Assembly (NCBI GenBank): GCA_965637545.1
Contig: OZ281501.1
Coordinates: 7,688,001-7,752,000 of the forward strand
Source of the DNA: Phallusia mammillata
Taxonomy: Eukaryota
Length of the DNA stretch: 64,000 nt
Direction: 5' to 3'
The notes beneath the pieces are model-generated. The model had not been told where the DNA came from and searched no databases. It saw nothing but the letters and a program-made list of their open reading frames with translations. This document shows, piece after piece, positions 7,736 through 63,356 of this stretch (within the stretch, counting starts at the first letter, position 1; each line of letters begins with the position of its first letter). The position numbers and the translations under genes were made by a program.

Positions 7736-10700
7736 TGGTTTTGTGCCAACAACTTTACAACGTAACACTTCTTTGGAAAGCCAAGCAACAACCATAGAAG
7801 GTTCACCATCGCCTGGTTTGCTTCCCTCTTCACCACAAAGCATGCAGTTTTATCCGTCAACCCAACAACAGGTTTAGCGGCCTAGTTTAAATATAACACA
7901 GACATTAAACCTTTAGTGTTAATGTCACCGATTTAACACTGACCTTTAAAATACTTAGGTTTAACCTATTTGGACATTTTTGCAGTGTATTTTTACTGTT
8001 TAACCTTTTGGGTGTAGTCAATTCCAGATAGATGTGTTAAATTATGTTTGTACATGTTGTCAAGGTCAACATAGACTGGCCAACAATACTAATTAAAGTC
8101 TAGCTTATATAAATACTAATTTAGTTCACAAAAAATTCCACTTTGTTGTAAATATTCATGGTTTTCTTGACTATAGATGGTAAATCAACTTGGACAACAT
8201 GCTGCTTTTAATCCATCATTTTTGGATGCAATAAAGGGGGACAAAAAGATGTTTTCCTATCCTTTTTACCCAATCCATACATCCAATGGAGAAACAACTA
8301 TGGACCCAGCAACGGCTAGTGTTGCAAGATCAATAGCTACAGCAGCAGTCCCAACTTCAAATGGATACCATAACCCGCTGATGGGTCCAGCATTTGGGAA
8401 TATGACAGGCATGCCCTCAGTGCCCTATAGTCATCCAGGTGAGTAAGACCACTTTGTCAAATTTATTCACTGAAACAAGGTCATGTTTTGATATGTCACA
8501 TTCATGTTTTGATATCTGCTATAATGTATGTGCTGCTGTTATGATTCCACAAGCAAGGGTTTAACTTTATCTTTGTGTGTATTGAAGTGCGTATAAAGGT
8601 GTCTTTTTTAAACTCTACCATAATTACCCATCAGAAATCAATTAAAATTATACTACTCACCTAAACAGAAAATTCAAGGTTTACTTGATACTGTATAACC
8701 TTTGTGCATACTGACTATCAAATCTATGCTTAGGGTGTTTTATATTTGCTATATATATATATTAAATGTGTATACAGGTATATCCACTTTCTACTGTAGT
8801 TTATTTGTGACAGCGTGACCTTTTTAGGTCTGTATATTGTTTCCACTTCACATCACTTGATGTCACGGCTAATTATTGCCACAGCTGTAAAATGATTGTG
8901 GTACTTATCATTCATATGTCGGACAATTTCTAGCACCCATATAATTCTTCATTATAAGTTAATACCATTGCTAAATGTAAATATGATGTCAACTGTTGTA
9001 ATGTACTCTCTTGCAAAATGGGACTTTTGTACAAGAAAAAATCTGATTAAATACTATATGCCAGGCCTATTAAAGGCGTTATTCCGAATCAATTATTTTA
9101 AATGTCCGTACTTAACTTCTGCTTTTGAGAGCATCAACAATTTGTTTATTCCAAAATTCTTATGTTTTTATTTACTGTCAACAGACATCCAGGGGTTCTT
9201 TATAAATGCTGCAGCCCAGGCTATCAGTGCAGCTCTCAAACCCCTTTCTTTATCCCCACCTGCAACAGCCACAACCCAACGAATGGGAGTTAAATGGCAA
9301 CACACCTCATCAAACAGTGACACCCAATCTGCATCCAATAAACGTCTGTGTATGGAACAAACTCAAACAGGTAAGGTTAACAAATGATTGTCACAAAAAA
9401 GAGTAAAAAAATACCAACCGTGACAATTGTTTGCTGTATAAGTTCTTTAATACTTAATTAATTGACTTTTCTAGTCAATGTCTTGTGTTTTTTTGGGTGG
9501 TAATGTTTTTGTTGTATTCATTTTTCTGTTGTTGAGGATTTTTTTAAGGAATTTCAGAAATAATTTATATTTGCTACCAGGACTTGCTTTTTGTGGCTAA
9601 AGATACTTCTTAAGCTTTATGTCAAAAAAACATCATCTTGGCACAATTGAAAGGTCAACGCAATGAAGTCATAAGTTAATGAGTTTGCAGATGTGCTTTG
9701 CAGCAGACAGACAGTAGACCTCAGTCAAGAAAATGTCACCTTTATGTTGGTTGCAAGCCGCCAGGCAAGCGTTTAGCTACAAAACTGTTGCGAAGATGGT
9801 CAATGCCCAAGGGCGATTCTTGCATCTCTTGTATTTGATGCCCACACGACACTACACCGTAAATTGGTTTTATCTTGAAATCTGTGGAAGCCACAGCAGG
9901 TGTGCTTGCTGGCCTTGTGTGTTGTGATTTGTTAAAATCTCACACAGTCAACGCGTAAATCCGTACAAACTGCCGCTGTGTGCATCAATTTTCCGTGTAA
10001 TTGGCCCCATTGTAAAAGCTTATTCCATCGTGTCAACTTGTTTAATTTTGTGTGGCGTGTAGCCATGGTCTTTACTCAGGTGGTTTGGCGTTCAACACTC
10101 TAAAATGTACAGGAAAAATGTCAAAGTGTCTGCAACAAGTAGCGTACGTGACTGTGACGGAATAAAGGTTTGCCTTCTATTCCCAGAATAAAAACAATAG
10201 AGTTTAAAGGGCTGTTTTCATCATCATTTATTACAGTGGCCTGATAATGACCCCAACATAATGTGTCGTTGATTCTAGGTTAAACAAAAACTTTTGTTTT
10301 CCGCAAAGTCCTCTAAGGTATAACCCACACAAAAGAATTAAAACTTTGGCCCTGGACCGAACGTGGTTGGTACTTTATGCAACATGTATTGGTAGATCGT
10401 TAATACAAAAAAGTACAAAAAATACCTAAACCTTCAAAGGGGTCCGCAACTAGCTTACAGCATCGAAAAGGGTCCGCAAATGCAAAGAGGTTTAGAGTCA
10501 CTGCTCCAATGTTGAAGTTAACGTTACCATAAGACTGGGACTCAAGATGAGCACAAACGTAAAAGCGCTACACCTATTTAACCGTAATTTGGATTTACAT
10601 AGAGCATCGATAAGGGCTTTTTTGAGTCCCCATGGATCTGCATAACGGACCCCTTCGGGACCCATTACCTCACTTTATGGACCTCAGATCTACAAGACAA

Positions 10701-39922: not shown

Positions 39923-40742
39923 ATGGCTGCGAATTTCAACGAACTGGACAGTATCGACCTAGCGTCCCTGGCTATTGGTGGTTGTGGCGGTCTAAAACCA
40001 CAACCTACTACAGCAGGCTACAACCAGCGTTACAACGACAACATCAATGTGACTTATAACAATATAAACGACTGCGTGAGCCGCCCACCTAACTTGAACT
40101 CGTGTGCTGTGAGCGGTGCTGAACCTGTTAATGGCACCGTACCAACAACTGGACCTTACATGCCTCCGTCTGTTGCTGTCAAAAGTGAACCAAACGGTTT
40201 TCACCCAAACGTGCCCCCGAACCAAAACTCTTACCCCCAAGCAGCCCCACCTTCCCAGGGAGGTTTCCCTCCAAATGCTAACCAGCCCCGCAACGCAGCA
40301 TCTACTATGAAAGCGCTTGGTTTTCTGACCGAGCGTACGATCGAAAATTTCTTTAAAGACGGAAAGGGGGTTTCTCACGCCACCCCTTACCCACCTGTTT
40401 CGCGCAAATCGAGCTTAGGGGGACACGCACCCAAACTCGGCGAAACGCTGCCCCCCTTAAAGCGCTCACAGCCCTATTCAAATCCACGTGATATGTATAA
40501 TGCAAATTATCAAAACTATAACGGAGGCGCACTTCCAAATGGCCGTATGATGCAGCACCATCAGGCCTACGCCCACCATAGACGCCAAAATGGGTTACAA
40601 GCGGGTCCCTGGGTCCCAAATGATGGGGGTATGGGTATGGGACCCGGTTTGCCTCCTGTCAAAATGGAATGGAATGAGTTTAACGACCGTGGCATGCTTC
40701 GCCATGATGCTTATGCTCCTAACATGGGGTATTATCCTCATG
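39923..40742 (+). CDS. Large P/G/N/Q-rich coding exon, inferred RAR isoform-1 N-terminal extension (273 codons)
   Basis: Longest ORF in the window, higher GC, strong donor gtgagt; two psi-K-x-E motifs (VKSE, VKME). Confidence 0.85.
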
Positions 40743-43700
40743 GTGAGTTATACAGTTTCGGTGCAAGGTTGTTTATTTTAAAGGATAAATGTGACTTCCT
40801 CGGTTAAACCTAGTTTAGTTTAGGCTGGCGATTCATGTGGTTTTCTTGTACCAACTTGGACAGTGTTGTATATTGTATCAATTTTCATTTTACTAGTTTT
40901 TAAACTGAGCTTTCAGGTGTGCTTGTAACGTTTTTAAGTATTTAACCCTGTGGTATTTTGTTTTCAGATGGCAGCGATCGGCCGATAATTCGTGATGAAT
41001 CGTTTTCACCACCAGGTGGCGTGCACATGAACGGATTTCCAGGAGCTGAACGGATGAGAGGTAGGAGATGTTTTTTATTTGTTTTTTACAACATACACTG
41101 TGCCCATGGTTTCAAATTCCAACTCTTAAGGTTTACTGCGTTGTTCGTTAAAACGTCCAACTGTCAATTGTCAGGCTCAAAGCAAGCTTGTGCCGTTTGT
41201 CTGGTTCAAATTGCAACGATTAAGACAGTTTTAAACCAGCGGCAGTTTGGCATTGACAACTGTATAAAAGTGTATAAGCATGCTTTGGTCTGTTCACAAA
41301 TTGTAAAACTGATGCCTTAAGAACTTCATCAGAAATCGCAACTTAAATTCCAAGTTAAGATTACGTCAAGGCAGTGGGTTTTTCCACTGTATCGTCACAA
41401 TGTCGTCAGACAAATGCGACCACAGCCTGTTTGGTGATACAAGTAAACAACGGGCTTGTGCGGGAATGAGACAGCGCATTTGGTAGCAAGCAATTAATGT
41501 CTGAAAACCTATCACGTTTCGTGGTTCAGTCGAAGGCAAGCCGCTCACAAAAAGACGGAACACCTCAAATTTCCACTTGTCTTTGCCACTCTTTGTTTAT
41601 TATAGTATATACTGAAGAATTTCAAGCTTAGAAAACGCTGTGCTCAGATGAACAAATCTTAAACACAAATTTGGCCATCTACAGAGTTTTAACGAATAAC
41701 ACAGCTTTGCTGTTTGTAAACCGTGAGATATTTACACATATCGGGATATTTGTTGGATTTAAGATTTTTCAACTTTTGTTAATGCACCTTTGTAGCACTA
41801 AACAGCACCGCTTAAAAATTACCCACAAAATAATGTTGTTTATTCATTTCAAAAAAGTTGCTATTACACCATTGACAGAAACTCGCCATTTCTAAACTAT
41901 TTTTTAAGTTTTTAATCTTAGTAGGAAAATGACACCAGCAGTTTGCGAAAACGAGATGCGAAACTACCGTATTTTCCCTTATAAGACCAGTGAAAGTGCT
42001 CTTATAGAAAAGTTTCGGTTATCGTACAGTTTACTTTGTGGTCATTGTCTTGACATGCGGATACAAAACCAAAAGCACAATGTTTTGTTCCGAAACTATA
42101 CCTGCTACGTCTTTGTGATTTAAGTTTCACACGAAATATGAGGATCCGGTTTTGTTGTTGTTGGACCAACAGCTTTTTACAGCAAAGACAATTCATTCCT
42201 GAAAACCTTTTGCGTGATTTTTAAAAATACGTGCTTTCTTCACGTTTTAAAGGTTTTAAAGGGATATTTCAGTTTGTAAGATTACAAAATATACATTAGC
42301 AAGTTATATTTTTACAACCCGTTCAATTTTAGACAATTCCAACTTTTTTCAGCTGCTGTTGATCTAATAAAATGAACTTTAATTGAAAACCTTGATCTGA
42401 AAACAGTTAAAAACATAGAAACATTTTCACTAACTTTGAAAGTTTTGTTTTTCCAACGGTTCCTTTATATATTATTCGGGACTTTGTAAGCTTGGTTTAA
42501 ATGATTCTTAGTTGTTAGAGTAACGGATTTGCTTCAAAAACTGCCCCCAAAGACATGTAAAAAAGACTCAAGGAAAATGCAAGAGTACAAAAGCGCAAAT
42601 ATATCAGAACAAACATGAACAACAAATCTTTGATCTTAATTAAAAAATTACAGTCCGGAAATACGAAGCGGCCACGAAACTTTTCTTATTAAATTATAAA
42701 CATGGCCGTCGTGTCAAGTTGTCCCAAATTCAATTTAAATGTGGCGTGAAGTCATAAAACGTGATTGAAGACTAGACTGGGCGTAACTAACATGTCCAAC
42801 AACCCAGCAACTATTTGAACATGGCAACGTCGACAGATTTTAAAAATTAAACCAAAGTCGACTGTTCTTTTCTATTTTAGGTGCTGGTTTACTGTTCTTA
42901 AAACAACAACATCTGTTTTATCAGTAGCAGATTCGATCTACACATACATATTCAAATACGAACTGTTGCCTTATGCGCTATCTTGTTTATCATTACATCA
43001 TCGCATTACAGCGCTTGCCTCACTTCGTCAAGGATAAAGAGTAAACAATTCCAAAATAACCACTGTCAGCCCCCGCAAGTAGCAGTACAACAACAAAAAC
43101 GCGACACTTTTTAGCACGAAAGTCTTCTGTAAATATTTTGTCCATCTTCAGTTTATTGATGTTTTCTACGCCTCCATGGCTTGTTGCTGTCGTTCGACGT
43201 TAAGCTCCGGAAATTGTCTCTCGTGCATTCGCTCCCTATAATCCGGATGCATTTTCTCCTTCAAGTTTATTTACGCGTTCCGATTTTGCTTGGCCTGAAA
43301 TCTTGTGCTTGGTCTTATTGTAAACAAGTAGGGGTATAACATTTCTTGTCTTTCGCGTGTATTGGGAATATCTGATGAAACCTTTCCCAAGGTTGTCTGT
43401 TTTGTAATTTCGTCACAGGGTGTTCGCAACCAACTCAATTAACTAGTTTTACGCTAATTATTGCGTTAAGATACGTGTTTTAGTTAGTTGATTGTGTTTC
43501 ACAAGACATCTCAGCACGTTTAGTTTATCATTAAATGGATAGATTGACATGTTTGTCTTTGTAAGAAATCAGAATTTGTTTAAATTCAACATTTTGTTTT
43601 AATTAGTTATGGTGGTTTTGAAAACCTTGCTTTTTCCACATATTTTCTGTGAATTTTTACAAATCTTTAGTTAAACTATATTCACTTTTCCTCTACGCGG

Positions 43701-46700
43701 GCCTGACCCCCAATTTCGATAAAGAAAGAGTGGCTCAAATTTATTTAAAGCTACACAAGTAACATATATGTATTTGTCATAGTATGTTGCATTGTGATTC
43801 ACAGGTCCCCAAAATGTGAATTTTACAACAACTTAGTATTTACCAAAGTTCAAGACCTGGAAGTCTCAAGTTTGGTAGTTAATGCATTTCAAACGATTTA
43901 ATTCTTAAGCAATTTACCCACACCTAATCGTTCAAACTCAATCCACTTTAATCTTGCGAAGTCGTGCATCTAAGGTGTGTAGTGGTATACCATGTTGGTC
44001 AGAGCCGATTGTGGTCGCTTGACTTTTTGATCAAGCTTCACTATAAACAAGTACCATGCCGCGTTGTCTGTTGCGTTGGAACAGCATTAAAGAAGTTATA
44101 CAGTGCTGAAGTCATTAACATATAACGCACTCGTTATTTTGTACAGCGGGATTCTCGTTTTGGAATAGATATACGTTGTTTTCCTTCTCTTTACATTTGT
44201 AAGCTTTACAGCTATATTTGTGGTCTATATGGAGATATAAATTTTATTTTGTTAATACTGTACAGGCTAATCACTTAAAACCTGTTTTAATCCATTAAGA
44301 TACTGAGAATCGAGAGTGTTTTCCAAGTAACAGTATCAGTCAATGAATTTACATGGAATATATACATTTCGTCTAACTGGCATATTCAGTTTCCACAAAA
44401 CCACAAGATAAAACATAATAAAACCACATTGTTTCCAATGAAATTAATGCAATGAAACATTTATAATAGTCGTATGGGGCCAGCAATGTGATACATTTGT
44501 CGAATCGAAATTTAAAGCTATTTATTTGCGCTTTCGTAACCTTAACAACGTAAGCCTTTATTCTAAGAAACACACGCAATTCGCTTGCTTCATGAAAGCC
44601 AGTTATTCAGTAATAATTGCAGACCCATCTCACCCATACCAAACCTAGTTCAGCAAATACAAGTTCCAATTAACGATACCAAGGTGCTGATTATTGTCAC
44701 AAGCCAACGGTTAGTTTAATTTTTTCGGATATGTTTTCTCCTGTGCCGGTGGTTAGCTGCTAATTTACCAATTCTTTGATGCTTTTTTGCTCAAAGTTAC
44801 AATGTTTTGCAACAGGAAACATGACCCGTGGGCTTGAGAAGGTTGTTACAAAAAAGACTGAACAATCGCTTGTAAGAATTTGGGTAATGTTATGTGTATA
44901 TTTTTTACATTAACATCAACATTAAAAGGTACGTCTGTTCGTGTGTATGTACAAGTTCATTGTGTACACTAAGGACCACTGTGACCAACGTTGGGTATGT
45001 ACGCAGTAGCCACACACCAATTAAAGCGCAGCATATATTTCATGTGCTCTAAGAAAGAGAATTGGCCTTTCTTTTCCTTTGAGACGTTAAAGTCAAAAAT
45101 TGTAATGTTTGGTATATATATTTCTTAAATTTAAAACCAACAGTTTCTTATCTAACTTAGTAATTTTTACAAATCTCTATTTCGAAATGTTAGAAATTTC
45201 CACATTACAGCAGGCTAAAGGTTACATAAGCGTGGCGCTTATCGTGTTGCGCGTGGCGTATGTCGAAATATCACCGAGGGTAATGAAAACATTTGCAGAT
45301 TCGATTGTAAGATAACAGTTCCCATGTACCACAAAATGATCGTACTTGGACAGATCAAAATTCTCCTTTAGCAGCGAGTGAGATTGTTTGAGTGCATTGT
45401 TTTTATTTCCGTTCTGTAATCCCCTCGGATTTCCGATTTGTAGGTAAATGGCGTGTTGTCTTAACCGGTCGCCATTGACCGAGAGGGGCATTTAATGTTA
45501 TGTAACAAAGACAAGACATGCTTTATATAACCAAAGTAAAACACTGGGAAACAATTAAAAGCCTTAAAAGAACTTTTTTCGTCATGATTTACTAAAAGAC
45601 CCATCGTATACAATGCACACACAATCAAAAACATCCCTTTGACTATATATTTACCATGTTTTCGATAGAATAAATATCTCTTAACAACTAATCACCCAAA
45701 GGGTCACAGATTAAGTAGCCACAATTTACTGGTACGATATCGTCAATAGGCATCATATGGCTCTTTCCTACGTGGTATTGGCTGCAGCCGCAAGCCAACT
45801 GATGGTATCTCTTCAGATCGTTACAGTTTTGCGGCTTAGAAGAGGCACAGAGATAAGTGCGAATATCGTTTTTTACTCAATGGTAGTGGCACTTCATGCC
45901 TAGTGTTGGTAGTATGCCCTGCTTTTCTTTTTCACAAACCCCTTATTTTGTGAAATATATCATGAAAATACGATATGCTTTATTATTTAACGTTTCGACA
46001 AATGCTCATGTCATCATCAGTGATGAGGGGTTACACCAGTTTTTAAACGCTTGAGTCACATAACTTCTATTTGGGCCGTTATTTTTATCATTAAACTTAT
46101 GAAAAGATTTATGTATAGTGTTCCAAAATATATTGGAAGTGATTTGGTGGTCACAAGAAATTGGTTTTCTAGGTTGAAGTAAAGTGTTGCACATTTTGTT
46201 TTGTCCTTTGTTTAATTTTTTCGCTGTTCATTTAAAATAGTTGCCTTGGGCATTAAAAGTATGTTGCAGGCGTTTACGCGGCCTGACAACGCAAATTTGC
46301 TTCGTCGCAGGGCGTAATCCAAATGTTTACACAAACGCGCAAACACAAACAAACTCTGAGCGCCTCCGCACCCTGCCACCCTGTGGCGCTAGAGTGCCCT
46401 CATACAAGCTACAACCGGGTTCAGCGCAAGGTCAGCACCGGCTTGGGGGTTCATCTGGAGGTCACGCCGCGCGTCGAGGCGACCGGTTCCGCATGGTTGC
46501 GCGTGGCTGGAGGCGCTGGTATCTTCTTTGCACTGATTTTATGGTTGCGAGTTTTGCGGTCACACCGGGAATTCATGACCGTATTCGACTATGAGCTTCG
46601 CTTCTAAGGTTCCGCTACGTATGAATGGAATACTAGCACGGGCAATTGGCTTTGCTAAACTTGAATTGGAACTGCGCTGTTGGTTTGTTTCATACGTGGC

Positions 46701-49700
46701 AAACCAAGTGTCATTTCATTACATAGTCAAATATACATTTTCCGAACATTTTTGTTGTAAATTTTCACCTCACAAAAGGATTGTTACCATTTGTTGCAAG
46801 CCATGGCGCTTAAACGGACAGTTTTATGCCGAAAGGATGCATTGAGAGTTATTACGGCCTAATTAGTCACATTTGATACCTAGGCGTCAATGCTCTTCAA
46901 CTCACAACACATCACTGCTTATGTTAGATATTCCTAGGAAAAGGGCAGCTTGCTTGACGTCGGCTGGGTTAAGCCGCTTATTAGCTTAAGACAGCCAATC
47001 GCTCTATCACGACGAGGAAACAAGGTGTACCGTGCGAACGTGAAAACCGGTACCTTTCTCCGTCCCAGCCCAAATCCAGGCACTGATTATTTTACAAACA
47101 CTGTCGCATGTCGCTTGTCTCGTTTAAGTCGTGGGAAAATCAACTTTCGACTTGTGCGATGACTTCTTTGGTGGTTTCGGGAGTGACAACGTGTCCTTGT
47201 TTCTTGGAGATTGTGTTGTAAGGAATCAAAACTCTTACAGTGCTATTGTGATAGCGGTTGTTGATAGTATTCACTATGGCGGTTGGGTGTTTGACCAAGC
47301 TAAGTCCATGGTGTTTTTCATTAGTAATGGTATAGCTACAATACTTAAATTTTTTGCTAGAAAGATTTGTACAAGCCTCTATACAACGTATTAAACCAAA
47401 GTGAATTCCAGTTGCTTATGACAAGCACTTACAAAAACTATCTTTGTCTGTGGTGTGGCTTTCACAATTCTCTACCATCAAACCTGTTTACGAAGCTGGT
47501 GCAGACGAGATCGTGATGGTATGACCGCCGCAAGCTGCTTAACTTGAGCTGCGATTCTTGCCGACTTCATATATCACTTTTAATTAATATCGTACGCTTG
47601 AGGCAATACTACGCAGAATGTTTGATTTCGTTATGCAAAATGCGGTCTATATAAACCGCTTTAGCCGCTTTGAATTCTTTGTACCAACCTCTAGGCGTAA
47701 AACCACCAATAAACATGACTGTTTTGTAAACATAATATCACCATAATATCTTAAGCCCTTAAAATATCTTTCAACGTGGGTATTTCGTCATATCTTAACT
47801 GCATAAAGATCAAACTAATGTCATTTTGGGGTTTTAGGTTCGTTTAGGTTTGAACCTAAGCCCAGTTTTTTTCATTTTCCTTCCTAAAGTTTTGGCTGGC
47901 GCCAATTTCATTAGTGTATCATAACTTTCGCTATAGCGATACTTCAGCATACGTTAAGGATTTCCTATTGGCTGAAAACATCGGTGTGCAACAGGCAAGG
48001 GTCCAACTTGCCTTTATTGAGCTGTAATGGGTTTTGTGATTTCTTGCCATTTCGCAATCATCTTACACAATTCAACTATCCACTTGGGATGCCAAATAGA
48101 ACACAGAATTATAAGTACATGTCCAAGAGCTAGTGTTGAATGTTGCACACTTAAAACATGCTTACGTGCATGTTGCATACTGTGCAATCAAAATATAGAA
48201 AGCAAAACTCATGCCAGGTTTTGTGTGACGTTGTATGGGAAACATGGGTTGGTCTATAATTATTCCAAGTTTTCACAAGCAACCTCTGCAATTACAACTC
48301 CCGGTTTGGTAAGACAATTTCACTGGCTTGCTTTGCTATACCTAAACTTGTTATTCGCTGTCTTTGTAATAACCCTCTTTGTTTTACTCTGGTTAGCCGA
48401 TCTTAAATCCATTGCCCATTATTATATCCGCAAGTGGGCGCTATTGTCACTGTGGTTGCTTTATGTCGTGCCTGTGCAGGACGGACAGTTGCAAAGATTG
48501 ATTTAATTGTATATTTTCTTAACTTTCTTCTCTAAAATCTTTGATGGAATTTAAAGATAAAAATATACCCCAAATATATTTTAGGTTCATATATGAAAAA
48601 TCCCCAACCATATTAAATTTTACTCTGATGGGTTTCCCCCGGTCGTTTAACACATCTTTTGGTTAGCAACTAAGCACGTCGTATAATCGTTTTTGCCAGG
48701 GTAGAATTTGTAGCACAAAAAAGTTTGTAAAATTTCGTATTGCTTTTGGCGGCATGGTTTCATCTAATGTCATACGTTATTGGCAAGCACACTAAAGTCT
48801 AAATACAGACTTCTAGTGTGTAAGTTACGCACATCAGAACATGTTGGCATCAAACTCAACAAACATCCTACAAAATTACGGCGAAAAGCGCAGAGGATGA
48901 TGTTTTGACGAGTTTATCGTGTCGTTACTCAGTTAAGTTAAAACAACACACGTAGCGGTATGTTCATGACGATTCGACCTGCCCTGTGCTGACTGGTAGT
49001 GATATTTCTATCGGAAATGAGTCAATCGCATCCGAACCTAACTGTAATTGACGTGCACTAAACTGATGGATACCTCGCACCTGTCACTTGTACACTTATT
49101 TGGTCTGTGTGACAACTGATTAGTTGTAGGTGTGAGGCGCTACCCCAGTGTTTGTAGAGAGGTTGTAATTGGACCAGACGTAGGATTTTTTACGCATTTT
49201 ATTGATTGACTGCTTTTGTAATTGCTGTGCCCCTTCCGCAAAGATTGCGATTGTTATTCGTTTAACGCTGATTTATTTTTAAAAAAATGCAGTAGCGGTC
49301 GATAATTAACTGAGGTATACTACATCGTTTGACCCTAATTGATCTTTCGGGTAACCTTTAAGCCCTTGGACATAAAAATCGAATTTATTCACATTTTGGG
49401 CAACCAATAAACGTCCCCATTGTCTTTTGGTACAGTTTCACAAAAGAGCTTAATATCAAACAATGCACAAATTACATAACACACAAATATTTTGTTAGAA
49501 CCAAACACGGCGTTGCGGTGACATAACAGTTAAGGGTTACGACTTTATGTACGTCATTGCAACTATCATTTATTACTGTGCATCATTAGTCTATTGTGAC
49601 AATTGCTACCGTTGAAATGACTCATTTAGACGTGATCTCATCGCGCTGTGATCGGTTACTATTCACGAATTCAAACGTTACCAATGGGTGTACGAGATCA

Positions 49701-52700
49701 CATTGCTGTAACATAATCCCTCTCCTTGAATGCTGGGCCTTAGTTCTACAACCTCTGTCATTGTTTTGTCATTAATGGAAAACAGACAAGGGCACATTGG
49801 GTAGTCTGTTTTATTTCACCAGCCCTCTTGGTGAGACTATCAAGCTTTAATACGTGATGTGTCATAATGATTAATTATACATGCCAAATGACGAGGGAAA
49901 TTTATGTAATATACTCTGTTTGCGTAATGTATTCAATTTTGATCGTTTGTAAATGTTTTCTTTTTTTTGAAAGGTTAGAATTTACATCATTTTATGGCGC
50001 AGTTTATTTTTACCTCAATTAACTTTTATACCCAATACCTAACAAGCCGAAGGGTGGGCAAAGAGTCATCTGACTCTTTTTTAAAAGAATTTCTGTCTGT
50101 ATAATAATTACAAACACCATAAATAGAAAAAAAAGGTTTTAAGTGGCTTTGTACAGTCATGCTCTAAAACAAGAAAATTATAATCAAACCACTTAATCAA
50201 TAAGTTATTTAGTCCTTCCTTATGCCCATTTTAAGCAACTTAACATTAAACTGCCGTGAGAGCTATTACGATTTCCATGTAACTTGGCATTGAAACTTAG
50301 CAGAGATCTAACCCCGAGCCATCGATATTCCCGCAGCTGTGCTAGTGGTTGCCAGTATGGGTTGTCTAATATGCTAGATTAGTCTCAAGCAATTACATTA
50401 CAAGGGCGATGACAGACTTTTAAAGCAGCAGCTCTGTGAGATTATTCTTAAGTTGATTCGACCTAACGATTCGTCCCTGTGATAACATTACTGAGGTGTT
50501 GAAAAGGTAATTGGTATTTATTTTCTGTCAATCAAGTACCGTTGGTTTTGCGCAATTGACTTGCTTCCCAGGGGGTTGTGGTTGAAATCTAAGCATCCTA
50601 TACAAGTTTTGTTTGGTAATACAAGCAAACGTAAGAAGAACAAAAAAACTGTTTTATTTTTGCCTTTGTTCTGTTTCAGTGCAAAACATATTAACACGCA
50701 GTTGTTCAATGTTTTTTACTACACTATGTTTTTTGCCAAGTAATGCCAAATTTTGGTGGTTGATAAACCGTTCCCACGATCGTGTAGGCCTTTGTGACGT
50801 CACATAGCATCTCTGGTTTTGCATCTTGAGCAAAGTGACGTGATACTCGATTCGCTTCAACCTGAAAAAAAAACATTTTTGATAAAACACAGCTTTTGCG
50901 TATAGTATTTACTACATAGTTGCACGAAAGTATTGTAGCATGGTATGACTTGACCGTGCAATTTGCAAGTGAACTCAAAGGCATTGGTATTTACCGAGAT
51001 ATTAAAATCAATTATATATTTGCTCTTTCCACAAAGACCGCTCGTATCTACGTATATACTGGTTTATTTCTTAAGTTCGACCTTTAAGATGTTGAACTCG
51101 TCTTAGGTCTTAAGCTTCTGCGGCTGTATGCCCTTGGGAAGATTTGCGCAATTGATATAATTGTTGGCTCAGTCTGATACACAGTCGCCGTGTTATTTGT
51201 AATTATGAGCTGAATGTCGAGTATTTTAAGTAGCACAATTCAACTGGTTGCATGTACAGTCTTTTGATTTGTACTTCATTACGAAACATGTTGTTTTGAC
51301 CTAAGGTTTGGTTGCATCAATGTAACACCGTATTCTAGGGTAATAGCTTTACCATAATTGTTTCCACACAATCTAAGCTAAACAAGACCACGAAAAAATA
51401 GTATAGCTTTGTAATTATGTCAAATTGAACCTGTAGCCTGTACATTGTAACAAATACCCGTTCGGACACTAGGTATCAATTTCCTAAGTCAAAACAATGG
51501 AAATCCAAACAGCCTTAGGCAACGTACTGTTTGTAATAGTTTGCTTTTCCACCCCAAGGGGACGAAAACCCGCCGTTCGTAATCGATTTGAGATTTTCCT
51601 TGATAGAGTGGGCGCCAACCGCTAAGTCTTAATCTGTCTTCTCTATTGTTTTGAACGTAATTCGCTTACACCTTGACGCTGGTATGACCTCATGATCGAC
51701 ACCGGTTCAATGTTGTTACCGTTAATGATGACAGAACATTAAATGGAAAGAATATGCAACAATCTTTTATGACATGTTGTTTTGTGGGGAATTGTAACAT
51801 ACGGTAAAATCTGCGTTATGTATTCGACCAAAAGGTTGAAAAAAATGCATGATATACTCATACGCATGTAAGCTTCCATATCAAGAACATTTTAATGCAG
51901 TTTTTACAATATATAGTCGTGGGTAGATGTGTTGAGGACTTATAGTAAAATATCAGGTTTATTCTGGTAAACGACCAATTTGAAATTCACAATCCTGATG
52001 GTCCCTTTAAATATATGTTCTATGGTAGCAGCCCCCAAAAATGCGGTTTGGCCGAGTTTGCTAGCTGTACTGTTTACTGCTTGTGAACAGATACCTTGTA
52101 GTAGTCACAGGCAGAGCATAATCCTGTTCTTGACATAGTTTCGTATCCGTACCCTTAGCATTGTATTCTGCACTAACGTTTACATTTAGACGAGGTTCAA
52201 TAGCACGCAGCGCATTGAGTAAGCACTTGAACAGGCATATGAAACTACTTGGCCTAGTTCCAATGCCGTGTTAAAAACAACAATCCCATTTGTAAATACA
52301 TTCCTTAAAACGAGATAGGAAAACAATTTTGGTTCAAATTTTTGGGATAATACTGAACAGGTTATTTTTTCCCATAGGTCCAAGTTTCAAACATGTAGGA
52401 TGTAATTTCGAAATATACGTGATGTTAACTTGGCATTTTATTGTTCAATGCAATTATTGGCTTCAATGTTATGTTGCTGGGGTCGGCCAGGCAACGACGT
52501 ATTACGAAACAAATTGTATTAAAATTTATTTACGGTAAATATGACTTCCGCCAATTATTATTCACCCGATGTCACATGTAATTAAATTACTTTTGTTTAC
52601 TGTAACGTGGATCCATTTTTTTTTGTTTTTGGTAGTTTATGTAACTCAGTCATATACGGCACAATTGTAGCGGTATCTTGTGGATGTTTTTTTTTGCGAG

Positions 52701-55700
52701 GAAGTATTTCCTTACTGCTCTGACTTCACACGCTATACCTGCGTTTAGGAGGTCTTCAGACGTTTGCGTGTATTTTGATTGGCACTACGAGGGGAAGCGA
52801 AAATGGGTCTTCCGAGTTCACCAGGTTGTCTAAAATTCATTTTAATTTTATTTCTTGTTTTTCCGTATCCTTTTTTCACATCTGATAACACTAATTTTTT
52901 GATTGGGTTTCTATTGGTAGGCCTAAGTTTAAAAAGTGTCATTTGGTCAACGATGAAATTAAAATGGATCAAAATTCAATTTCCCTATACGCAGAGTAGC
53001 TTAAACGAGCAGTGCAGTACTGGCTGTTTTAAAGCAGGGTTCTGACTACTATGTTAAACAGCCAGTCCTAATTGCTGTCAGTCTTTTACCAAGTTTCATT
53101 TCCAAGTGACAAGCGTTAGTGAAGGCTGTCAGACATTATACTAGAGTTTTTTTGCCATTTCCTTTCTTAACCCATCAATCATACCACACTTACCTGTGCT
53201 GATGACTTAAATCCCATTGGTTCTCACAATAATTTTATTCCGCCTTGTAATGCCTTGCACTCCTGTGAACCCAGTATCTCACCTTTTAACCGCACGCCAA
53301 CACATTAAAGGAAGCCAGCTATCATAGATGTGACCGGAATTGCGATAAAATACGTGGTAACAAAGATATTTACAAAAAATATGAAGAGCATGTGGCCATA
53401 TCCCTTAGTTAATTCACTAACAGTGGTTTAGTAAACATTGCAACATATAGATAAGCATCGAATGAAAAATTTGTAAGCCAATTAATTCATTTTCTTGTTT
53501 GGTAATATTTGTGCTAACCCGTTTCTGTTCCCTAACTGTAAGGTTTATACACTTTTAGATTCATTCAATAGTGATAAAAAGCATGTTTACGATAGGGTAT
53601 GCATAAAAAGTTGGGCTTTAGTTTCTGAAAACCACTTTGGTAATTTACCATTTTGACCCCACGCTTAAACATTAAGGGTTTCTAAACTGGTCTCTGTCCT
53701 TTATTAATTGACACAAAAATGTAATATAAGTTTCGTAGGTTACATAGAAAAAAAAAAAAAAAAAAAAAAAAATTTTCCTAAATTGGTAGACAATAACTTT
53801 CTATATACATAATACGAAAATAGTTTGAGTGAAGAATTTTCGGAAACGTTTAACTTATTTTCGATTTCGGGTTACCTTGATTGATTATGAGTTCACCTAA
53901 ATATTTACTAAACAAAATTCAGAACGAAGTTAGTAGAAAAAGTCAAAAGGTGAACCACAGCATATTTTCCACTTTGTCAAATCTCGATTATCTTTAGCTA
54001 CATTTATTTTACTGTTAATGGGTTACTTTAGCTGACTAACGATCCAGTGTATTTTTAAAACCTTAGCGTCCTCGTTTGACGTTTTGACTCTTCTGTGGTA
54101 CCCAGTATTAAAGCGTTGGTGTAAAAGGATTTATTTGGTTCACCAGCTGAAAGGAAATGTTGACATTTACAGAAGCAGAGGCCGCGTCTTACACAAACAC
54201 ACAATCTATATAATATTATCATTAAACTGTATGCAAGCAGTGGCATCACAGAAATGACCTTTCTATGACCTGTTCCGCGAACTCGCCACGTCTTGCGTTT
54301 TCATCGGTTGTAGGAATTTGATTTTCCTGAGATTCTGTGGTCTGTTGCCATTTCGTTTCCAGTCTGGTTGCGGGTTTGTCGATTTAAATACAAACTGGGC
54401 TTTTTGTACTGTTGCTGTTTCGGGTTGGCCGGTTGCAGGTTGGCGCAGCGCTTGGTTACCACAAATTTAATATCATGCGGAAATACGCAATTCGTACCAA
54501 AGCGGCTACCGACAGGATTGTTTACGTGCAAATGCTGGGCCGCGAGAGAAAGGCGCAGGCGATTAAGAGTCAAAGGCGCGACAGAACGAGAAAAAGGCAA
54601 CCGATGACGAGAGAAGAAGAGAGAAAAAGAGCAATGCGTGAGCGGGGCCGCAGAATTTTTTGGTACTGGTTGCCAAACAGGCATTGGGTGTTTCTGTGTG
54701 TGCTAGGCTTGATGTACTGCGCTGCTGACGACAGTAGTGGCCTTATCCGCCAGCCAGGAAGTCGACATTGCGCCTGATCGCTGTTGTACATTGCATGTAG
54801 TGCGGTGGCCAACGCATTGATAAGAGCATTGCGCCGTGTAATAAACTTGTCAGTTTCCCACGTTTGCAGTTTGAAATAGCTTACCGTAAACCAGTGCAGA
54901 AGCAATCTATATTATACCATTAGTGGAAGCTGTTTTGCAGTGTAAAAACGTGTTGCCAAAAAGCTACCATACATCCGTTATCTGTATGATCTAGTTCGTA
55001 GTTTTTTCTGGATTAAAATAAGTGTAAACTATTTTAGTTTGTCTGCTTGCGTGTTAAACATGCAGTCAGCAGCTCGTTAAACCATCACGTAATGCACAAG
55101 GCGTGGATTTTGCGTGTCTGTTGCCTAATGATAATGATTACCACAATCCAGTGGTACAAGGTCAAACCTGGGTCATCGTGAGGCTCGAATTGTCGAATGT
55201 GTTAATCCAGTTGTCTTGTTACATCACAATGGCCTACCTTAGGGTTTTTCCCGCGTTTTATATTACTGCAGAAAAGATAGCAGATTCAATTTAATTAAAA
55301 GCTTTATTCTATGTTGTAGCTGTTGGAGGCAGATAAATTCGGAAATAATAACCCAAAGCGTTCAAAGTTTGCAGAAAATGTCTGTTTAGATTTTGCCACA
55401 GCCCCAATCAGTTGTTTATGTCGTGACGCAAGCCATATGAATATTGCATGTGGTTTGCGTTGCTCGGGTTTACGAAATTAAGCCCTTGTCTAGTCAGCAG
55501 ACTGTTAAACCTAATTATTATTATACTCTGTGTATTCTGAACAGCTTTGTGACTCAAAACATAGGTTGTCATACACTTTACAAAACACTGCTTGTGGCAC
55601 GTTTCCATGCTGCTGCAAGAGTGACTACAAATAGCAACTTTGCTACAAAAACAACGTTTTGAACCATCAAAAATCAAAATCTTCATCGTAATTTGACTCG

Positions 55701-58700
55701 ATCACTGCCATCATAATGACGATGGAATTTCAACAGCAATGGAGGAATCGCATGAACGGGATTCTGATGGACATTTTTACCCCAACAACCAGCAGTATGG
55801 GTGGGGGTATGGGCAATGGTGTGGGCTGTATGTATGGCGGTATGCATACAGTGATGGATTCACCACCACCTTTGCATAATCTCTCTATTAACCCGCAGAA
55901 TAATTATCACCACAACCAATTTTACCAATGGGAGAACAATCAAAGATGTATGTATTCTCTGTTGTTTTTTTCATGAGGTTTTTAGTTTTTCTCGATGCAA
56001 AGTTGTTTTTAAAACTCCATAAATGTCGATAAGCGATAATTTTCTTGAAAAAAAAACTGTTTGGAAGCCTAAAGCAAAACTATGCATCCAATTAAATTAA
56101 GGTTTAATTAAGAATGTATAAATTTTAATTGTTTTGCCAAACTTTGTGCTCTATGCTTTGCGTAATGAAAAATAGGAAAGTACTGTCACAGTCAACATGG
56201 GGAATTGTTTAGCTATTTTAGCTGTCCGTCAAAAGGAAATCACTTCCGTGCTGTGTTTGTTGATACACCTGGTCAATTTGCAGCCGTATATAGTTGTTTT
56301 GAAATCTGGACAATGTGACCCATTGCAAGTTCACACCGCGCTGTAATCGGTGGTCAAAAAACCCAGCATGTGTATACACCTTAGGCGATGCGTCGTGGTT
56401 TGTTGCCTTTTGCGTCCGAACTAAACTTTTGTTTGTGGCAGGAGCTTCTAACAAGGCACTGTCTAATCACGCAAACTGTTTGCTCTTTACCAAGCGCGCT
56501 TTTTGGATCCCTTCCGAACCATGCGTTGTGCACTACTGCACTGTTAGGTCTTTGGGTCATTTTTTCTTGGCTGGTTACCGAAACTCATATCATGCTACCG
56601 TTTTAAATACGTTATGATAGCAATTTTTGTTTCATGATTCTTAACTAACAAAAGGGCGACAGACCGTATAATGTGTTGTTTAACTTGACAAGTTTGGTTG
56701 TAGCAAGACCAAAACTTTGCCACGCGTCAAGCAGGCATGTGCAAAACGATTTGTTGCTACATAACAGCGTCTTGTTAAACGAGCTTAACGTATATTGGTC
56801 TTGAGGCGAAACGGCACTTCGCCGATCCCGAGGGACAGTGCATTAAATACCCAAGGGAGTGGCAACAAATGATTTGGCGTTGGTTCTGTGATCGTTCTAC
56901 AGGGCCTTAACTGATGTCGGCGACGTTTTATATATAGACACGCCAATGGGGCATGTTTCAGCAAGACTAAAGAATCAAAGTTGCAGCGGTACCTCTTTAT
57001 CCATTGGTCATCTGATATTTTGTCTTAGTGTACTTCCCAACATTACTTTCCAGACCACATACTGGACTTTCTACTAGTCCCACTGGAAAAACAACCACCT
57101 TTTATTTCTATTCCCCTTAGTCCAATGGTATCAATTTACTACAAAAAAAAACATTGTTCTGTTCGAAGTAATAAACTTCAAAACATTTGCATTATGTCTT
57201 TCAGTTCTTATTTCAAGCGCATCCGACCATACAGTTTGTAAGTCTTATGACCTTTTTGACCTTGACAACCGTGAAATTTACCCTTCACTTACCAAAACAA
57301 ATGGACTGACAACCGATAATAACGTCTTTGCTTAGCCGAAATCAATTCCGTGAAAAAAAAAGCAAAAAACTAATAATGTAATCAATTCTTTCTGTGCTTG
57401 CTTGGAAATAAAGTCAAAAACTCTTTGTATCTTATCAATAGTAATGTCGATTATCAGTGTAATTATTAACATTACGCACTCCTTTAAAGCAGAATACAGT
57501 TAAAAATAAGGACTTTTTAAAGATTGTTAAAAATATTGTTATGGCTGAAGCCAAAAATGTCTATGTAGACCATGCTCTAGCCATACCGTCGTCATGAGCG
57601 GGCAAAATATTTGTGTGTTGCAATGTGAACACGATGTGCAATAACGACGCAGCAATACAACTCACGTTGCACAACTATATCAGTCTCGTTTTGCTCACGT
57701 TTTGGCTACGAGATGTTCTTCATTTATTTGTTCGGATAATTTGCCAACACAACGATAGATGACACGAATTCACTGCATCCAACGAGCAAGTCACGCTTGT
57801 ATTCGATCTAACTTCCCCGCATGTGATGTTGTACTGTGACGAGAGTTTGTCACTTTGCGTCGAGTTAACTGCAAAGAAATGTGGTGCAATGGCGTAGGTG
57901 GCCAGCAGAAAGGATGTGAAAATTCTAACCCTTCCCGTTCTGTATACCTTTTTCGTCCAAAACAAAACTTAGCATTAGAATTTTCATCGGTGCAAAATTA
58001 TTTCGGTTGTCAATAAGTGTATTTGGTGTTTTTAGCCCGGTTATCTGTTTTAGGTCCATGTCTAGTCTTTTTAAGTATCTGTGACATTGTAGCTTGTAGG
58101 TGCGTTTTGGATAAGTTGTGTGATAATAGTCTACTTAACTCCTCAAGCTTTTCAAACCAGTTGCATTGCTGCAACCGTCAACTAAAAGCAATTTCTCTTA
58201 CACATAATCTTCTAATCTTCTGTCATCATCCAAGGAATATGACTCACATGTTGTTCAATCTCGTGTCTGTGTTTACCATAAACATTTCTAAACTTTCTGG
58301 CAAACAATTTAAAAATGCATGACCAAGTCTATGCCCTTTATTGGTAACGCAAACTATAATCTAATTACCAAAGTGCGGGATTATGCTTGAAAGTTTTTGC
58401 TGATTTTTTGCCCTTTCATGATTCTTTTGTTGTCGGCGGTGGTGTTTTAACTGTAAACACCTTCGGTAGACGGAGGTAATCAATCTTAATCGTTTTTTTG
58501 TAAGTTTTAAGCAAGCTTTTAAACAATGCGGCGGTCTGTTTAAATACGGCCCCTTATAAGGTATTCCCTCATATGTGTCTATGTTTTTGTGTTCATAAGA
58601 AGTTAATTGCAAGAAATAACGGTTGCATAGGTTTGTGTCCGTATGTGGTTATATGCGATAGGTTGTTGTAGCGCAGGTCGCATGTTTGTCTGCTGTGTTC

Positions 58701-63310: not shown

Positions 63311-63356
63311 CTTAATTGGTTAATCAATCTATAGAAAAACAGCGCGCTACCAATAT

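What the first reader, a model, noticed from the sequence alone, without database searches (positions are those of the whole stretch)
39923..55947. Two alternative RAR N-termini resembling vertebrate isoform 1 and isoform 2
Seen: two separate 5' coding regions both end in phase 1 and join in frame to the exon at 60558. The distal one contains [11 protein letters not shown] (vertebrate RARalpha1 region A: TPGGGHLNGYP). The proximal one has LMDIFTP (loosely like RARgamma2 CMETFAP / RARbeta2 CMDVL) and a Trp shortly before the junction, as in vertebrate isoform-2 A regions. Vertebrate sequences are recalled from memory. Inference: the isoform-1/isoform-2 split may predate vertebrate RAR duplications.
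Basis: partly seen in the sequence, partly recalled or inferred. Interest (0 to 1): 0.75.

Follow-up and report, generated by a model that had tools for sequence, protein, structure and literature searches.

The report
Ascidian RAR gene: three alternative N-termini
This is the front half of the retinoic acid receptor gene of the sea squirt Phallusia mammillata. Both proposed alternative protein starts are real and spliced to the shared DNA-binding exon, and a third probably exists. Their likeness to vertebrate isoforms 1 and 2 rests on gene layout, not on demonstrable sequence homology.

Summary
Transcript contigs from four runs join 55947 to 60558 (GT..AG). They also join the distal unit's last exon (ending at 41060) to 60558. 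The distal protein is already deposited: Phallusia mammillata RAR (A0A6F9DPR7) is 100% identical over 39923-40742 + 40968-41060 + 60558-60751.

The picture is richer than two isoforms. Ascidian RARs have three N-terminal classes:
- U: far-upstream exons, here about 7368-9370.
- D1: 39923-40742.
- P: 55716-55947.

U and D1 share the small exon D2 (40968-41060), which holds [11 protein letters not shown]. Ciona has the same exon order, and Clavelina has it from D1 onwards.

The sequence resemblance to vertebrates is weak:
- D2 against vertebrate A1: hhalign P=0.024, shuffle p about 0.002-0.02. It is significant in Phallusia only.
- P against A2: not above chance. The M of LMDIFTP is not conserved among ascidians.
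- A wrong-class control match reached p=0.003.

The layout does match vertebrates. Distal and proximal units lie in the same order. All junctions are phase 1, which I checked in a teleost. A Trp lies 5-6 residues before the proximal junction and the junction codon is Ser. All four DR5 sites in the window lie upstream of P.

The finding is real. It is a new member of a known kind. The homology claim is unproven.

The parts
7368..7399 (+). U0: putative first coding exon of the far-upstream (U) class (MDKTKPTVAN-G), donor GT, ends in phase 2
   Evidence: Inferred. It is in frame with Ua, and the six-exon model has no stop and canonical AG/GT at every junction. It lies 245 nt after the snurportin ORF. 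In Ciona the corresponding gap is 248 nt. No RNA was laid on it.
7736..7871 (+). Ua: U-class coding exon
   Evidence: tblastn with Ciona Q4H2W2 (P0002) residues 22-64 gives 56% identity, E=9e-5. Splice sites were read.
8177..8438 (+). Ub: U-class coding exon, ends in phase 1
   Evidence: It is an open frame with AG/GT borders and is collinear with P0002.
9185..9370 (+). Uc: U-class coding exon with the conserved DIQGFFINAAAQAISAALKP motif. It ends on 'g' in phase 1 and is in frame with D2.
   Evidence: tblastn with P0002 residues 117-164 gives 50% identity. The same motif occurs in Ciona, in Styela (weaker) and in an unnamed tunicate, P0284. In runs X1 and X2 the D2 contig breaks one base before D2. 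This fits two upstream partners that both end in G.
39923..40742 (+). D1: large coding exon (273 codons + 1 base) of the D1 class, starting at the ATG
   Evidence: 100% identical to residues 1-273 of P0154, Phallusia mammillata RAR. Runs X1-X4 hold 0.59-0.73 of the words of 39923-41060, as expected for exons without the intron. Orthologous N-termini exist in Ciona (P0155), Styela (P0004) and Clavelina (L004 520-1204).
40968..41060 (+). D2: 93-nt phase 1-1 exon shared by the U and D1 classes. It contains [11 protein letters not shown] (41009-41041).
   Evidence: It is joined to 60558 in contigs of all four runs (loose end = window 41029-41058). It is shared by both isoforms in Ciona (P0002/P0155) and in Styela (P0151/P0004). 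Run X5 holds D2 words but not D1 words. Even so, its contig carries 879 nt upstream of D2.
46418..46464 (+). Twin DR5 sites (RGKTCA N5 RGKTCA) in the intron between D2 and P
   Evidence: The window has 4 perfect DR5 matches against 0.10 expected, and all four lie between D2 and P. Ciona has a triple overlapping DR5 in the same interval.
54255..54271 (-). DR5 site about 1.3 kb upstream of the P transcript start
55159..55175 (+). DR5 site about 370 bp upstream of the earliest P contig start
55543..55715 (+). 5' UTR of the proximal (P) first exon, with a 5-codon uORF at 55607
   Evidence: Contigs start at 55543, 55551, 55560 and 55639 with no unmatched 5' letters. No depth is seen upstream.
55716..55947 (+). 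P: proximal alternative first coding exon (77 codons + 1 base), with Trp at 55929-55931
   Evidence: The joint 55947->60558 (GT..AG) is present in four runs. The exon is held in full by 18 listed runs from 5 studies. Orthologues: Clavelina 67%; C. savignyi, Polyandrocarpa; Ciona genomic 23003-23245.
60558..60751 (+). C: common exon holding region B and the first zinc finger (…[35 protein letters not shown])
   Evidence: A HMMER search returns RARs as the top hits.

Best explanation
The window holds the 5' half of the single RAR (NR1B) gene of the ascidian Phallusia mammillata.

The exon for region B plus the first zinc finger (60558-60751) receives at least two, and probably three, alternative coding 5' units.
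1. A proximal first exon P (55543-55947) with its own transcription start. It lies 4.6 kb upstream.
2. A distal unit D1 + D2 (39923-40742, 40968-41060).
3. A far-upstream unit, inferred here: U0-Ua-Ub-Uc at 7368-9370. It also splices into D2.

All junctions are in phase 1, so any unit can be joined without changing the frame. The result is a set of receptors with the same DNA- and ligand-binding domains but different disordered N-terminal (A / AF-1) regions.

Shown:
- The exon borders.
- Both splices into 60558.
- Identity of the D1 isoform to a deposited protein.
- Conservation of the classes and their order in other ascidians.

Inferred:
- The U class in Phallusia.
- Separate promoters for U and D1.
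- Autoregulation of P through the four DR5 sites upstream of it.

The system works like the vertebrate P1/P2 (A1/A2) arrangement. Common descent of the individual A regions is not established. It is plausible for P and A2 and doubtful for D2 and A1.
For: RNA and the deposited protein:
- joint 55947->60558 in 4 of 4 runs, and D2 joined to 60558 in 4 of 4 runs.
- P contigs start at 55543-55639.
- P0154 (Phallusia RAR) is 100% identical across D1, D2 and C.
- P is held by many small RNA-like runs. D1 is held only in X1-X4. D2 alone is held in X5-X16.

Other ascidians:
- Searches give the three classes.
  - U: Ciona Q4H2W2, Styela X1, P0284.
  - D1: Phallusia, Ciona X1, Styela X2, Clavelina.
  - P: Polyandrocarpa K7ZRU3, C. 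savignyi, Clavelina, P0157, P0158.
- the Ciona locus has the order snurportin, U exons, D1, D2, P, C.
- Clavelina has D1, D2, P, C.
- the U model reads 903 nt with no stop and AG/GT at every border.

Comparison with vertebrates and amphioxus:
- phase 1 in Ciona, amphioxus and a teleost. Its RARgamma-A locus has A1 distal and A2 proximal, and both exons end in T before GTAAGT.
- DR5 clusters between D2 and P in Phallusia and in Ciona.
Against: - Only one read-laying run was allowed. The 879-nt upstream part of the X5 contig is assigned to U by arithmetic and orthology only. It would imply a 5' end near 7100, inside the end of the snurportin ORF.
- Whether D1 is a true first exon is open. An AG at 39880-81 followed by an open frame makes 39882-40742 a possible phase 1-1 cassette (861 nt) or a trans-splice acceptor.
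- The evidence is contigs, not reads. No strand, level or transcription start can be read. The runs are only guessed to be RNA, although they lack all intron depth (table 2).
- No experiment links the DR5 sites to P.
Confidence: 0.85

Rival explanations
1. D2 (the distal unit) is the orthologue of the vertebrate A1 region and P is the orthologue of A2. On this view the isoform-1/isoform-2 split existed in the tunicate-vertebrate ancestor.
For: - hhalign of ascidian D2 against vertebrate A1 places [13 protein letters not shown] on SCTPPG-NGHVNGY, P=0.024.
- An A1 profile HMM against the Phallusia distal region gives p=0.007, and p=0.002 on the last 46 aa.
- Vertebrate alpha1 and gamma1 share G-H-[LVM]-[NT]-G-[FY]-P.
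- Clavelina D2 keeps F.PP.GH.N.Y.
- The distal/proximal order and phase 1 match a teleost.
- Trp and Ser sit at the P and A2 junctions.
Against: - Ciona and Styela D2 lack the motif, and the Clavelina score is not significant (p=0.35).
- The better conserved YPF.F part of A1 is absent.
- P against A2 is at chance: hhalign P=0.24, HMM p=0.27-0.77, Smith-Waterman shuffle p=0.16.
- A wrong-class control is equally strong: the A2 HMM against Clavelina D1 gives p=0.0026.
- More than 30 tests were run.
- Ascidians have three classes and amphioxus has at least six.
Confidence: 0.17
2. Only the proximal unit is ancestral. On this view three exons descend from one chordate exon lying just upstream of the B-region exon: ascidian P, the small constitutive amphioxus 'W exon' (GDSWDDQRSSNHQSDRCIT) and the 3' part of vertebrate A2. 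The distal classes U and D1 would be tunicate inventions.
For: - All three are the exon immediately 5' of the B exon and end in phase 1.
- Each has a conserved Trp a few residues before the junction.
- Amphioxus WDDQRSS resembles ascidian W[DE]..QRS. Amphioxus SNHQS resembles alpha2 SNHS.
- The best local alignment of the amphioxus peptide falls at the very end of 5 of 6 ascidian P regions and 6 of 8 A2 regions.
- The last base is T, giving Ser, in ascidian P and in teleost A2.
- DR5 clusters lie in the neighbouring introns in Phallusia, Ciona and amphioxus.
Against: - The individual alignment scores are not significant (p=0.08-0.4).
- The amphioxus exon is internal and constitutive, not a first exon.
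- Its junction lies about three codons away from the vertebrate one in the obvious alignment.
- The evidence is positional and was gathered after the fact.
Confidence: 0.3
3. All ascidian N-terminal classes arose independently of the vertebrate A1 and A2 regions. On this view the shared layout reflects a general habit of nuclear-receptor genes (alternative promoters, phase-1 exons in front of the DBD). The motif matches would be chance in low-complexity, Pro/Gly/Asn/His-rich sequence.
For: - No test gives a robust signal after correction for multiple testing.
- A wrong-class hit is of equal strength.
- The number of classes differs among subphyla: 3, at least 6, and 2.
- The A regions match no Pfam family.
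Against: - Order, phase, junction Ser, Trp and size all coincide for P and A2.
- The D2 motif falls in the exon that occupies the A1-like position.
Confidence: 0.36
4. The distal coding region 39923-41060 belongs to a different, upstream gene and not to RAR.
For: None was found.
Against: - D2 is joined to 60558 in contigs of four runs.
- The deposited Phallusia RAR protein runs through D1, D2 and C into the DBD and LBD.
- Ciona, Styela and Clavelina have the same arrangement.
Confidence: 0.01

Closest known systems
Vertebrate RARalpha/beta/gamma isoforms 1 and 2 (P1/A1 and P2/A2)
   Same: - Alternative 5' units encode different A regions and join one exon that starts region B.
- The distal and proximal units lie in the same order. 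In a teleost RARgamma-A locus, A1 lies 6.1 kb upstream of A2 and A2 lies 8.2 kb upstream of B.
- Junctions are in phase 1, and the proximal exon ends in T, giving Ser.
- A Trp lies close to the proximal junction.
- DR5 elements near the internal promoter are a known feature of mammalian P2 promoters (my own knowledge). They are present here as sequence.
   Different: - Ascidians have three coding classes.
- Their distal units are long (about 230-305 aa, against about 57-70 aa) and are coded over several exons.
- The A2 start M[FY][DE]C[MV][ED] and its invariant Cys are absent.
- The A1 core YPF.F is absent.
- Sequence similarity is not statistically secure.
Ciona intestinalis RAR (UniProt Q4H2W2 and NCBI 'nuclear receptor isoform X1')
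   Same: - The gene neighbourhood is the same, with snurportin immediately upstream.
- The exon order is the same: U exons, D1, D2, P, C.
- Phases are the same.
- A DR5 cluster lies between D2 and P.
   Different: - Ciona has an extra U exon (Ud) that was not found in the window.
- Its D2 lacks the H.NGFP motif.
- Its introns are much shorter (D2 to C is 8 kb, against 19.5 kb).
- The Ciona P exon is seen in the genome, but no Ciona intestinalis P-type protein was among the hits.
Polyandrocarpa misakiensis RAR (K7ZRU3), Ciona savignyi RAR (H2Z1X1) and Clavelina lepadiformis RAR
   Same: - These are P-type proteins. They share the start (M)[20 protein letters not shown], the MDSPPPLQNL block and the end W[DE]..QRS before SPDS.
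- The Phallusia P exon is 67%, 54% and 48% identical to Clavelina, C. savignyi and Polyandrocarpa respectively.
   Different: No Phallusia P-type protein was returned by the searches. Only the D1-type Phallusia protein (A0A6F9DPR7) was returned.
Amphioxus RAR (Q8MX80 and NCBI isoforms X1-X6)
   Same: - There are many alternative first exons, all in phase 1, ahead of the B-region exon.
- The exon next to the B exon bears a Trp.
- DR5 clusters lie in the 5' introns.
   Different: - At least six short alternative first exons join a small constitutive exon and not the B exon directly.
- No first exon shows secure similarity to any ascidian class.

Membership tests
RAR (NR1B) gene | First zinc finger with a CEGCKG P-box, preceded by the RAR-type region B ([25 protein letters not shown]) | tested here: met
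   The exon sequence was read. A HMMER search of 1.84 billion representatives returns RARs at the top. These hits carry RAR names.
RAR (NR1B) gene | Second zinc finger and a nuclear-receptor ligand-binding domain downstream | tested here: met
   Both lie outside the window. The loose end behind 60752 reads on into GFFRRSVQKN. P0154, identical over D1-D2-C, has PF00105 and PF00104.
RAR (NR1B) gene | Binds and is activated by retinoic acid | not testable with these tools
   The Polyandrocarpa orthologue is reported to transactivate with all-trans RA (PMC1500811, read). Nothing is available for Phallusia.
Vertebrate-type RAR isoform 1 / isoform 2 system | Alternative 5' exons that encode different A regions and are spliced to one common exon starting region B | tested here: met
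   both joints into 60558 are seen in four runs.
Vertebrate-type RAR isoform 1 / isoform 2 system | A/B junction intron in phase 1, with the distal unit upstream of the proximal unit | tested here: met
   The window is phase 1. Ciona, amphioxus and the teleost RARgamma-A are also phase 1, and the teleost order is A1, then A2, then B.
Vertebrate-type RAR isoform 1 / isoform 2 system | A1 signature: G-H-[LVM]-[NT]-G-[FY]-P followed by Y-P-F-x-F | tested here: inconclusive
   The first half is present in Phallusia D2 (GGVHMNGFP), with hhalign P=0.024 and HMM p=0.007. The second half is absent. The motif is degraded in Clavelina and absent in Ciona and Styela.
Vertebrate-type RAR isoform 1 / isoform 2 system | A2 signature at the start: M-[FY]-[DE]-[CS]-[MV]-[ED], plus the invariant internal Cys | tested here: not met
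The ascidian P consensus starts (M)MNVMEFQEQW and has no conserved Cys. hhalign gives P=0.24 and HMM p=0.27-0.77.
Vertebrate-type RAR isoform 1 / isoform 2 system | A2 signature at the end: invariant Trp a few residues before the junction, and a Ser junction codon (T|C.) | tested here: met
   Trp lies 5-6 residues before the junction in 5 of 6 ascidian P regions, and 7-11 residues before it in 11 of 11 A2 regions. Both end in Ser. The last base is T in Phallusia, Ciona and the teleost. The chance level for this feature alone is roughly 0.15 for the Trp times 0.25 for the base.
Vertebrate-type RAR isoform 1 / isoform 2 system | Retinoic acid response element at the internal promoter, and induction of isoform 2 by RA | tested here: inconclusive
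   The window has 4 perfect DR5 matches (0.10 expected). All lie upstream of P, the nearest about 370 bp from the contig start. Binding and induction cannot be tested here.
Ascidian three-class RAR 5' architecture (U / D1 / P) | The same classes in the same genomic order in other ascidians | tested here: met
   Ciona locus L001 has the full order. Clavelina locus L004 has D1, D2, P, C. Styela (U, D1) and Polyandrocarpa (P) are known from proteins only. The Styela locus was not on record.

The most novel reading that the evidence does not exclude
Three exons descend from one exon that lay next to the region-B exon in the chordate ancestor: the proximal ascidian exon P, the small constitutive amphioxus exon GDSWDDQRSS…, and the vertebrate A2 exon. 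That exon was linked to DR5 retinoic acid response elements. On this reading an RA-inducible internal 'isoform 2' unit predates the tunicate-vertebrate split. The phase-1 exon set in front of the DBD would then be an ancient cassette system that each subphylum elaborated differently (2, 3, or at least 6 N-termini).
Probability: 0.35. Interest if true: 0.55.

Novelty: new member of a known kind. Interest (0 to 1): 0.4.

Why it matters
RAR isoforms with different N-terminal activation regions have distinct developmental roles in vertebrates. When that arrangement arose has not been settled outside vertebrates.

This locus shows that a tunicate with a single RAR gene already runs a multi-promoter, phase-1 exon system. 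It has a proximal unit flanked by DR5 sites, laid out as in vertebrates. The three ascidian classes are conserved across ascidian orders. I found no description of this in the searchable literature.

This gives a simple, tractable model for three questions:
- What do distinct RAR A regions do?
- Is RAR autoregulation through an internal promoter ancestral?
- Are the vertebrate A1 and A2 regions older than vertebrates?

The last question is made testable here, but it is not answered.

Tried and rejected
- A word-index protein search with the 273-aa D1 exon found nothing, because of the length limits.
- I first suspected a non-coding upstream exon ending at 38915 (gcag|gtaaat) as the alternative partner of D2. 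I dropped it in favour of the U exons, which have orthologues in Ciona and Styela. It is not strictly excluded.
- Smith-Waterman shuffle tests were run for all ascidian classes against A1 and A2. The only nominal hits were Ph_D/A1 p=0.024, Ci_U/A1 0.033, Ci_D/A2 0.046 and Cl_P/A2 0.035. These show no pattern that follows class.
- hhalign of P against A2 and against A1 found nothing.
- Amphioxus first exons were tested against the ascidian and vertebrate classes. There was one isolated hit, X3 against Styela D1, p=0.002 in 35 tests.
- Pfam found no family on D1, P, Ub or Uc.
- Six literature searches found no paper on ascidian RAR N-terminal isoforms.
- The classical mouse isoform papers (PMC452611, PMC452613, PMC53758) are not held. 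Statements about mammalian P2 RAREs therefore rest on my own knowledge.
- Several loci could not be fetched. Amphioxus B. floridae was too long. Styela was not on record. P0273 was not on record.
- There is no perfect DR5 in the teleost RARgamma-A locus.
Full report
**Identity of the locus**

The exon at 60558-60751 encodes SPDSVGLSS…[35 protein letters not shown]. This is RAR region B plus the first zinc finger.

A HMMER search of 1.84 billion representatives returned tunicate and then vertebrate RARs. A word search with the Polyandrocarpa hit named them:
- P0003: Polyandrocarpa misakiensis RAR.
- P0002: Ciona intestinalis nuclear receptor Q4H2W2.
- P0004 and P0151: Styela clava isoforms.
- P0153: Ciona savignyi RAR.
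- P0152: Clavelina.
- P0154: Phallusia mammillata 'RAR retinoc acid receptor' (A0A6F9DPR7, 694 aa).

P0154 is 100% identical to the window over 39923-40741, 40968-41060 and 60558-60751. The window is therefore Phallusia mammillata or something indistinguishable from it. The distal isoform is already a deposited protein. P0154 carries zf-C4 and the hormone-receptor LBD.

**The observation**

I read the exon borders from the sequence:
- D1: 39923-40742, donor GTGAGT.
- D2: 40968-41060.
- P: 55716-55947, donor GTATGT.
- C: 60558-60751.

D2 ends on g and P ends on t, each one base into a codon. C starts with 'ca'. The junction residue is therefore Ala after D2 and Ser after P.

One read-laying run was available. 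I spent it on 55000-60999 with four runs.
- Depth is confined to 55543-55947 and 60556-60752. No intron is covered, so these are transcript assemblies.
- The joint 55947->60558 (GT..AG) is present in all four runs.
- In all four runs a second contig ends 30 nt into exon C. The letters preceding it are identical to window 41029-41058. This is the D2->C splice.
- The P contigs begin at 55543-55639 with no foreign 5' letters, so P behaves as a true first exon.

Run holdings add the following.
- P is complete in 18 listed runs from five studies.
- D1 is held only in X1-X4 (0.59-0.73 of the words, close to the 0.8 expected for exons without the intron).
- X5-X16 hold about 5% of the words, which is the size of D2 alone.

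**A third class**

X5 lacks D1 words. Even so, its D2-containing contig has 879 nt upstream of D2. In X1 and X2 the corresponding contig breaks exactly one base before D2. That is what a de Bruijn graph gives when two upstream partners both end in G.

Ciona Q4H2W2 and Styela X1 have N-termini unrelated to D1 that run into the same D2-like segment as the D1-type isoforms of those species.

tblastn places the Ciona U-type N-terminus at 7752-7871 and 9145-9276 of the window. Reading the DNA gives U0 7368-7399, Ua 7736-7871, Ub 8177-8438 and Uc 9185-9370. All have AG/GT borders, and Uc ends on g in phase 1. Joined to D2 and C they give 903 nt without a stop, collinear with Q4H2W2.

This class is inferred for Phallusia. 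It has not been laid against reads.

**Conservation of the architecture**

The Ciona intestinalis locus (L001) runs in this order:
- snurportin: 8884-9753
- U0: 10001
- Ua: 10409
- Ub: 11383
- Uc: 12114
- Ud: 13059
- D1: 16951
- D2: 17740-17826
- P: 23003-23245
- C: 25969

The window has the same order, including an intronless snurportin ORF at 6191-7123.

Clavelina (L004) has D1 520-1204, D2 1598-1690, P 10001-10234 and C 14280-14477.

Styela supplies U and D1 proteins and Polyandrocarpa supplies a P protein. The three classes therefore predate the split of the ascidian orders sampled.

**Test of the resemblance to vertebrates**

The searches returned vertebrate A1 and A2 regions, which I sorted and aligned.
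- A1 shares G-H-[LVM]-[NT]-G-[FY]-P followed by Y-P-F-x-F.
- A2 has invariant M1, a Cys, a Trp and the final Ser.

Distal unit:
- Smith-Waterman with shuffles gives p=0.024.
- An A1 HMM against composition-matched shuffles gives p=0.007 for the whole 305-aa region and 0.002 for the last 46 aa.
- Ciona and Styela D2 show nothing.
- Clavelina keeps F.PP.GH.N.Y but scores p=0.35.
- The YPF.F core is missing everywhere.

Proximal unit:
- hhalign gives P=0.24 against A2 and 0.86 against A1.
- The A2 HMM gives p=0.27-0.77 for the five ascidian P regions it scored. The sixth gave no hit.

Control: the A2 HMM hits Clavelina D1, the wrong class, at p=0.0026. With more than 30 tests on low-complexity sequence, none of these values is decisive.

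**What does match is the layout**

In a teleost RARgamma-A locus (L005) the A1 exon (3001-3169) lies upstream of the A2 exon (9309-9453). A2 in turn lies upstream of the B exon (17664-). Both A exons end one base into a codon, with T before GTAAGT. The B exon starts with two bases. The same phase holds in Ciona and in amphioxus.

Ascidian P and vertebrate A2 share several features:
- Each is the unit nearest the B exon.
- Both end in T, giving Ser.
- Both have a conserved Trp, 5-6 residues before the junction in ascidian P and 7-11 in A2.

Amphioxus adds a bridge. Its six or more annotated first exons all join a small constitutive phase 1-1 exon, GDSWDDQRSSNHQSDRCIT. That exon is the immediate neighbour of the B exon.
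- Its WDDQRSS resembles ascidian W[DE]..QRS.
- Its SNHQS resembles alpha2 SNHS.
- The peptide's best local alignment falls at the very end of 5 of 6 ascidian P regions and 6 of 8 A2 regions.
- The individual scores are not significant.

DR5 sites:
- The window has four perfect DR5 matches (0.10 expected). All lie between D2 and P: 46418, 46448, 54255 and 55159.
- Ciona has three overlapping sites in the same interval.
- Amphioxus has five in its 5' region.
- The teleost gamma locus has none.

**Verdict**

The two alternative RAR N-termini are real, and there is most likely a third. The system works like the vertebrate P1/P2 arrangement.

Descent of the individual A regions from shared ancestors is not shown. 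My estimates are:
- about 0.45 that P and A2 are homologous;
- about 0.2 that D2 and A1 are;
- about 0.17 that both are.

That the 1/2 split is older than the vertebrate paralogues is classical. I recalled this from memory; the original papers are not held. I found no paper describing ascidian RAR N-terminal classes.

**Limits**

- The evidence comes from contigs, not reads, and run identities are coded.
- The U class and all transcription starts except that of P are unverified.

Noticed in passing
window 6191-7123 (+): There is an intronless 310-aa snurportin-1 ORF (PF21974 at 7.9e-77, PF11538) immediately upstream of the RAR gene. Ciona has the same neighbour at the same distance (about 245-248 nt before the U0 ATG). 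Under the U model the long contigs of X3 and X5 would start near 7096-7105, inside the end of this ORF. This could mean overlapping transcripts, an operon-like pair or a trans-splice site.
   Followed up: partly
L001 19126-19164 (Ciona intestinalis); L002 1877 and 15379-17100 (Branchiostoma lanceolatum): DR5 clusters recur in the 5' introns of the RAR gene. Ciona has three overlapping DR5 sites (four half-sites) between D2 and P. Amphioxus has one DR5 124 bp before the X1 ATG and four in the intron before the B exon. Each is far above the chance level of 0.06-0.07.
   Followed up: partly
L002 about 8005-8061: Amphioxus RAR has a 57-nt constitutive phase 1-1 exon (GDSWDDQRSSNHQSDRCIT). It lies between all the alternative first exons and the B exon, 11.4 kb upstream of the latter.
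   Followed up: partly
window 39880-39922: An AG at 39880-81 follows a pyrimidine-rich run, and the frame is open down to the D1 ATG. This makes 39882-40742 exactly 861 nt (287 codons, phase 1-1). D1 could therefore also serve as a cassette exon within U transcripts, or as a spliced-leader acceptor.
   Followed up: partly
L004 520-1716 (Clavelina lepadiformis): The public annotation calls D1+D2 as a separate 267-aa gene with no Pfam family. It starts the RAR gene at the P exon. This is probably a split gene model.
   Followed up: partly
window 55607-55624 and 55808: The P 5' UTR holds a five-codon uORF (ATG CTG CTG CAA GAG TGA). Contigs of X1 and X3 carry T>C at 55808, a synonymous change (GGT to GGC).
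   Followed up: no
window 63316-63846: Two to three near-identical copies of a short unit lie in the intron after exon C. The ORFs on both strands repeat …TSTICVNF.QIHQ.FDGKTSRTNFG… This is probably a small repeated element.
   Followed up: no
P0272 (amphioxus X3 first exon) against P0004 (Styela D1): Amphioxus MAQASMPGVSPQSS…SAHHSSSG gives a local score of 50 against a Styela D1 segment (…AAQSMPINGAAHHMSGG…). The shuffle p is 0.002 in 35 tests. It is isolated and low in complexity, and I did not pursue it.
   Followed up: no
P0288 (Babylonia areolata RAR) against ascidian D1: The mollusc N-terminus has RKMEWFDCSGW. Ascidian D1 ends with VKMEWN.F (Phallusia, Ciona, Clavelina). This is a short shared KMEW string of unknown meaning.
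   Followed up: no
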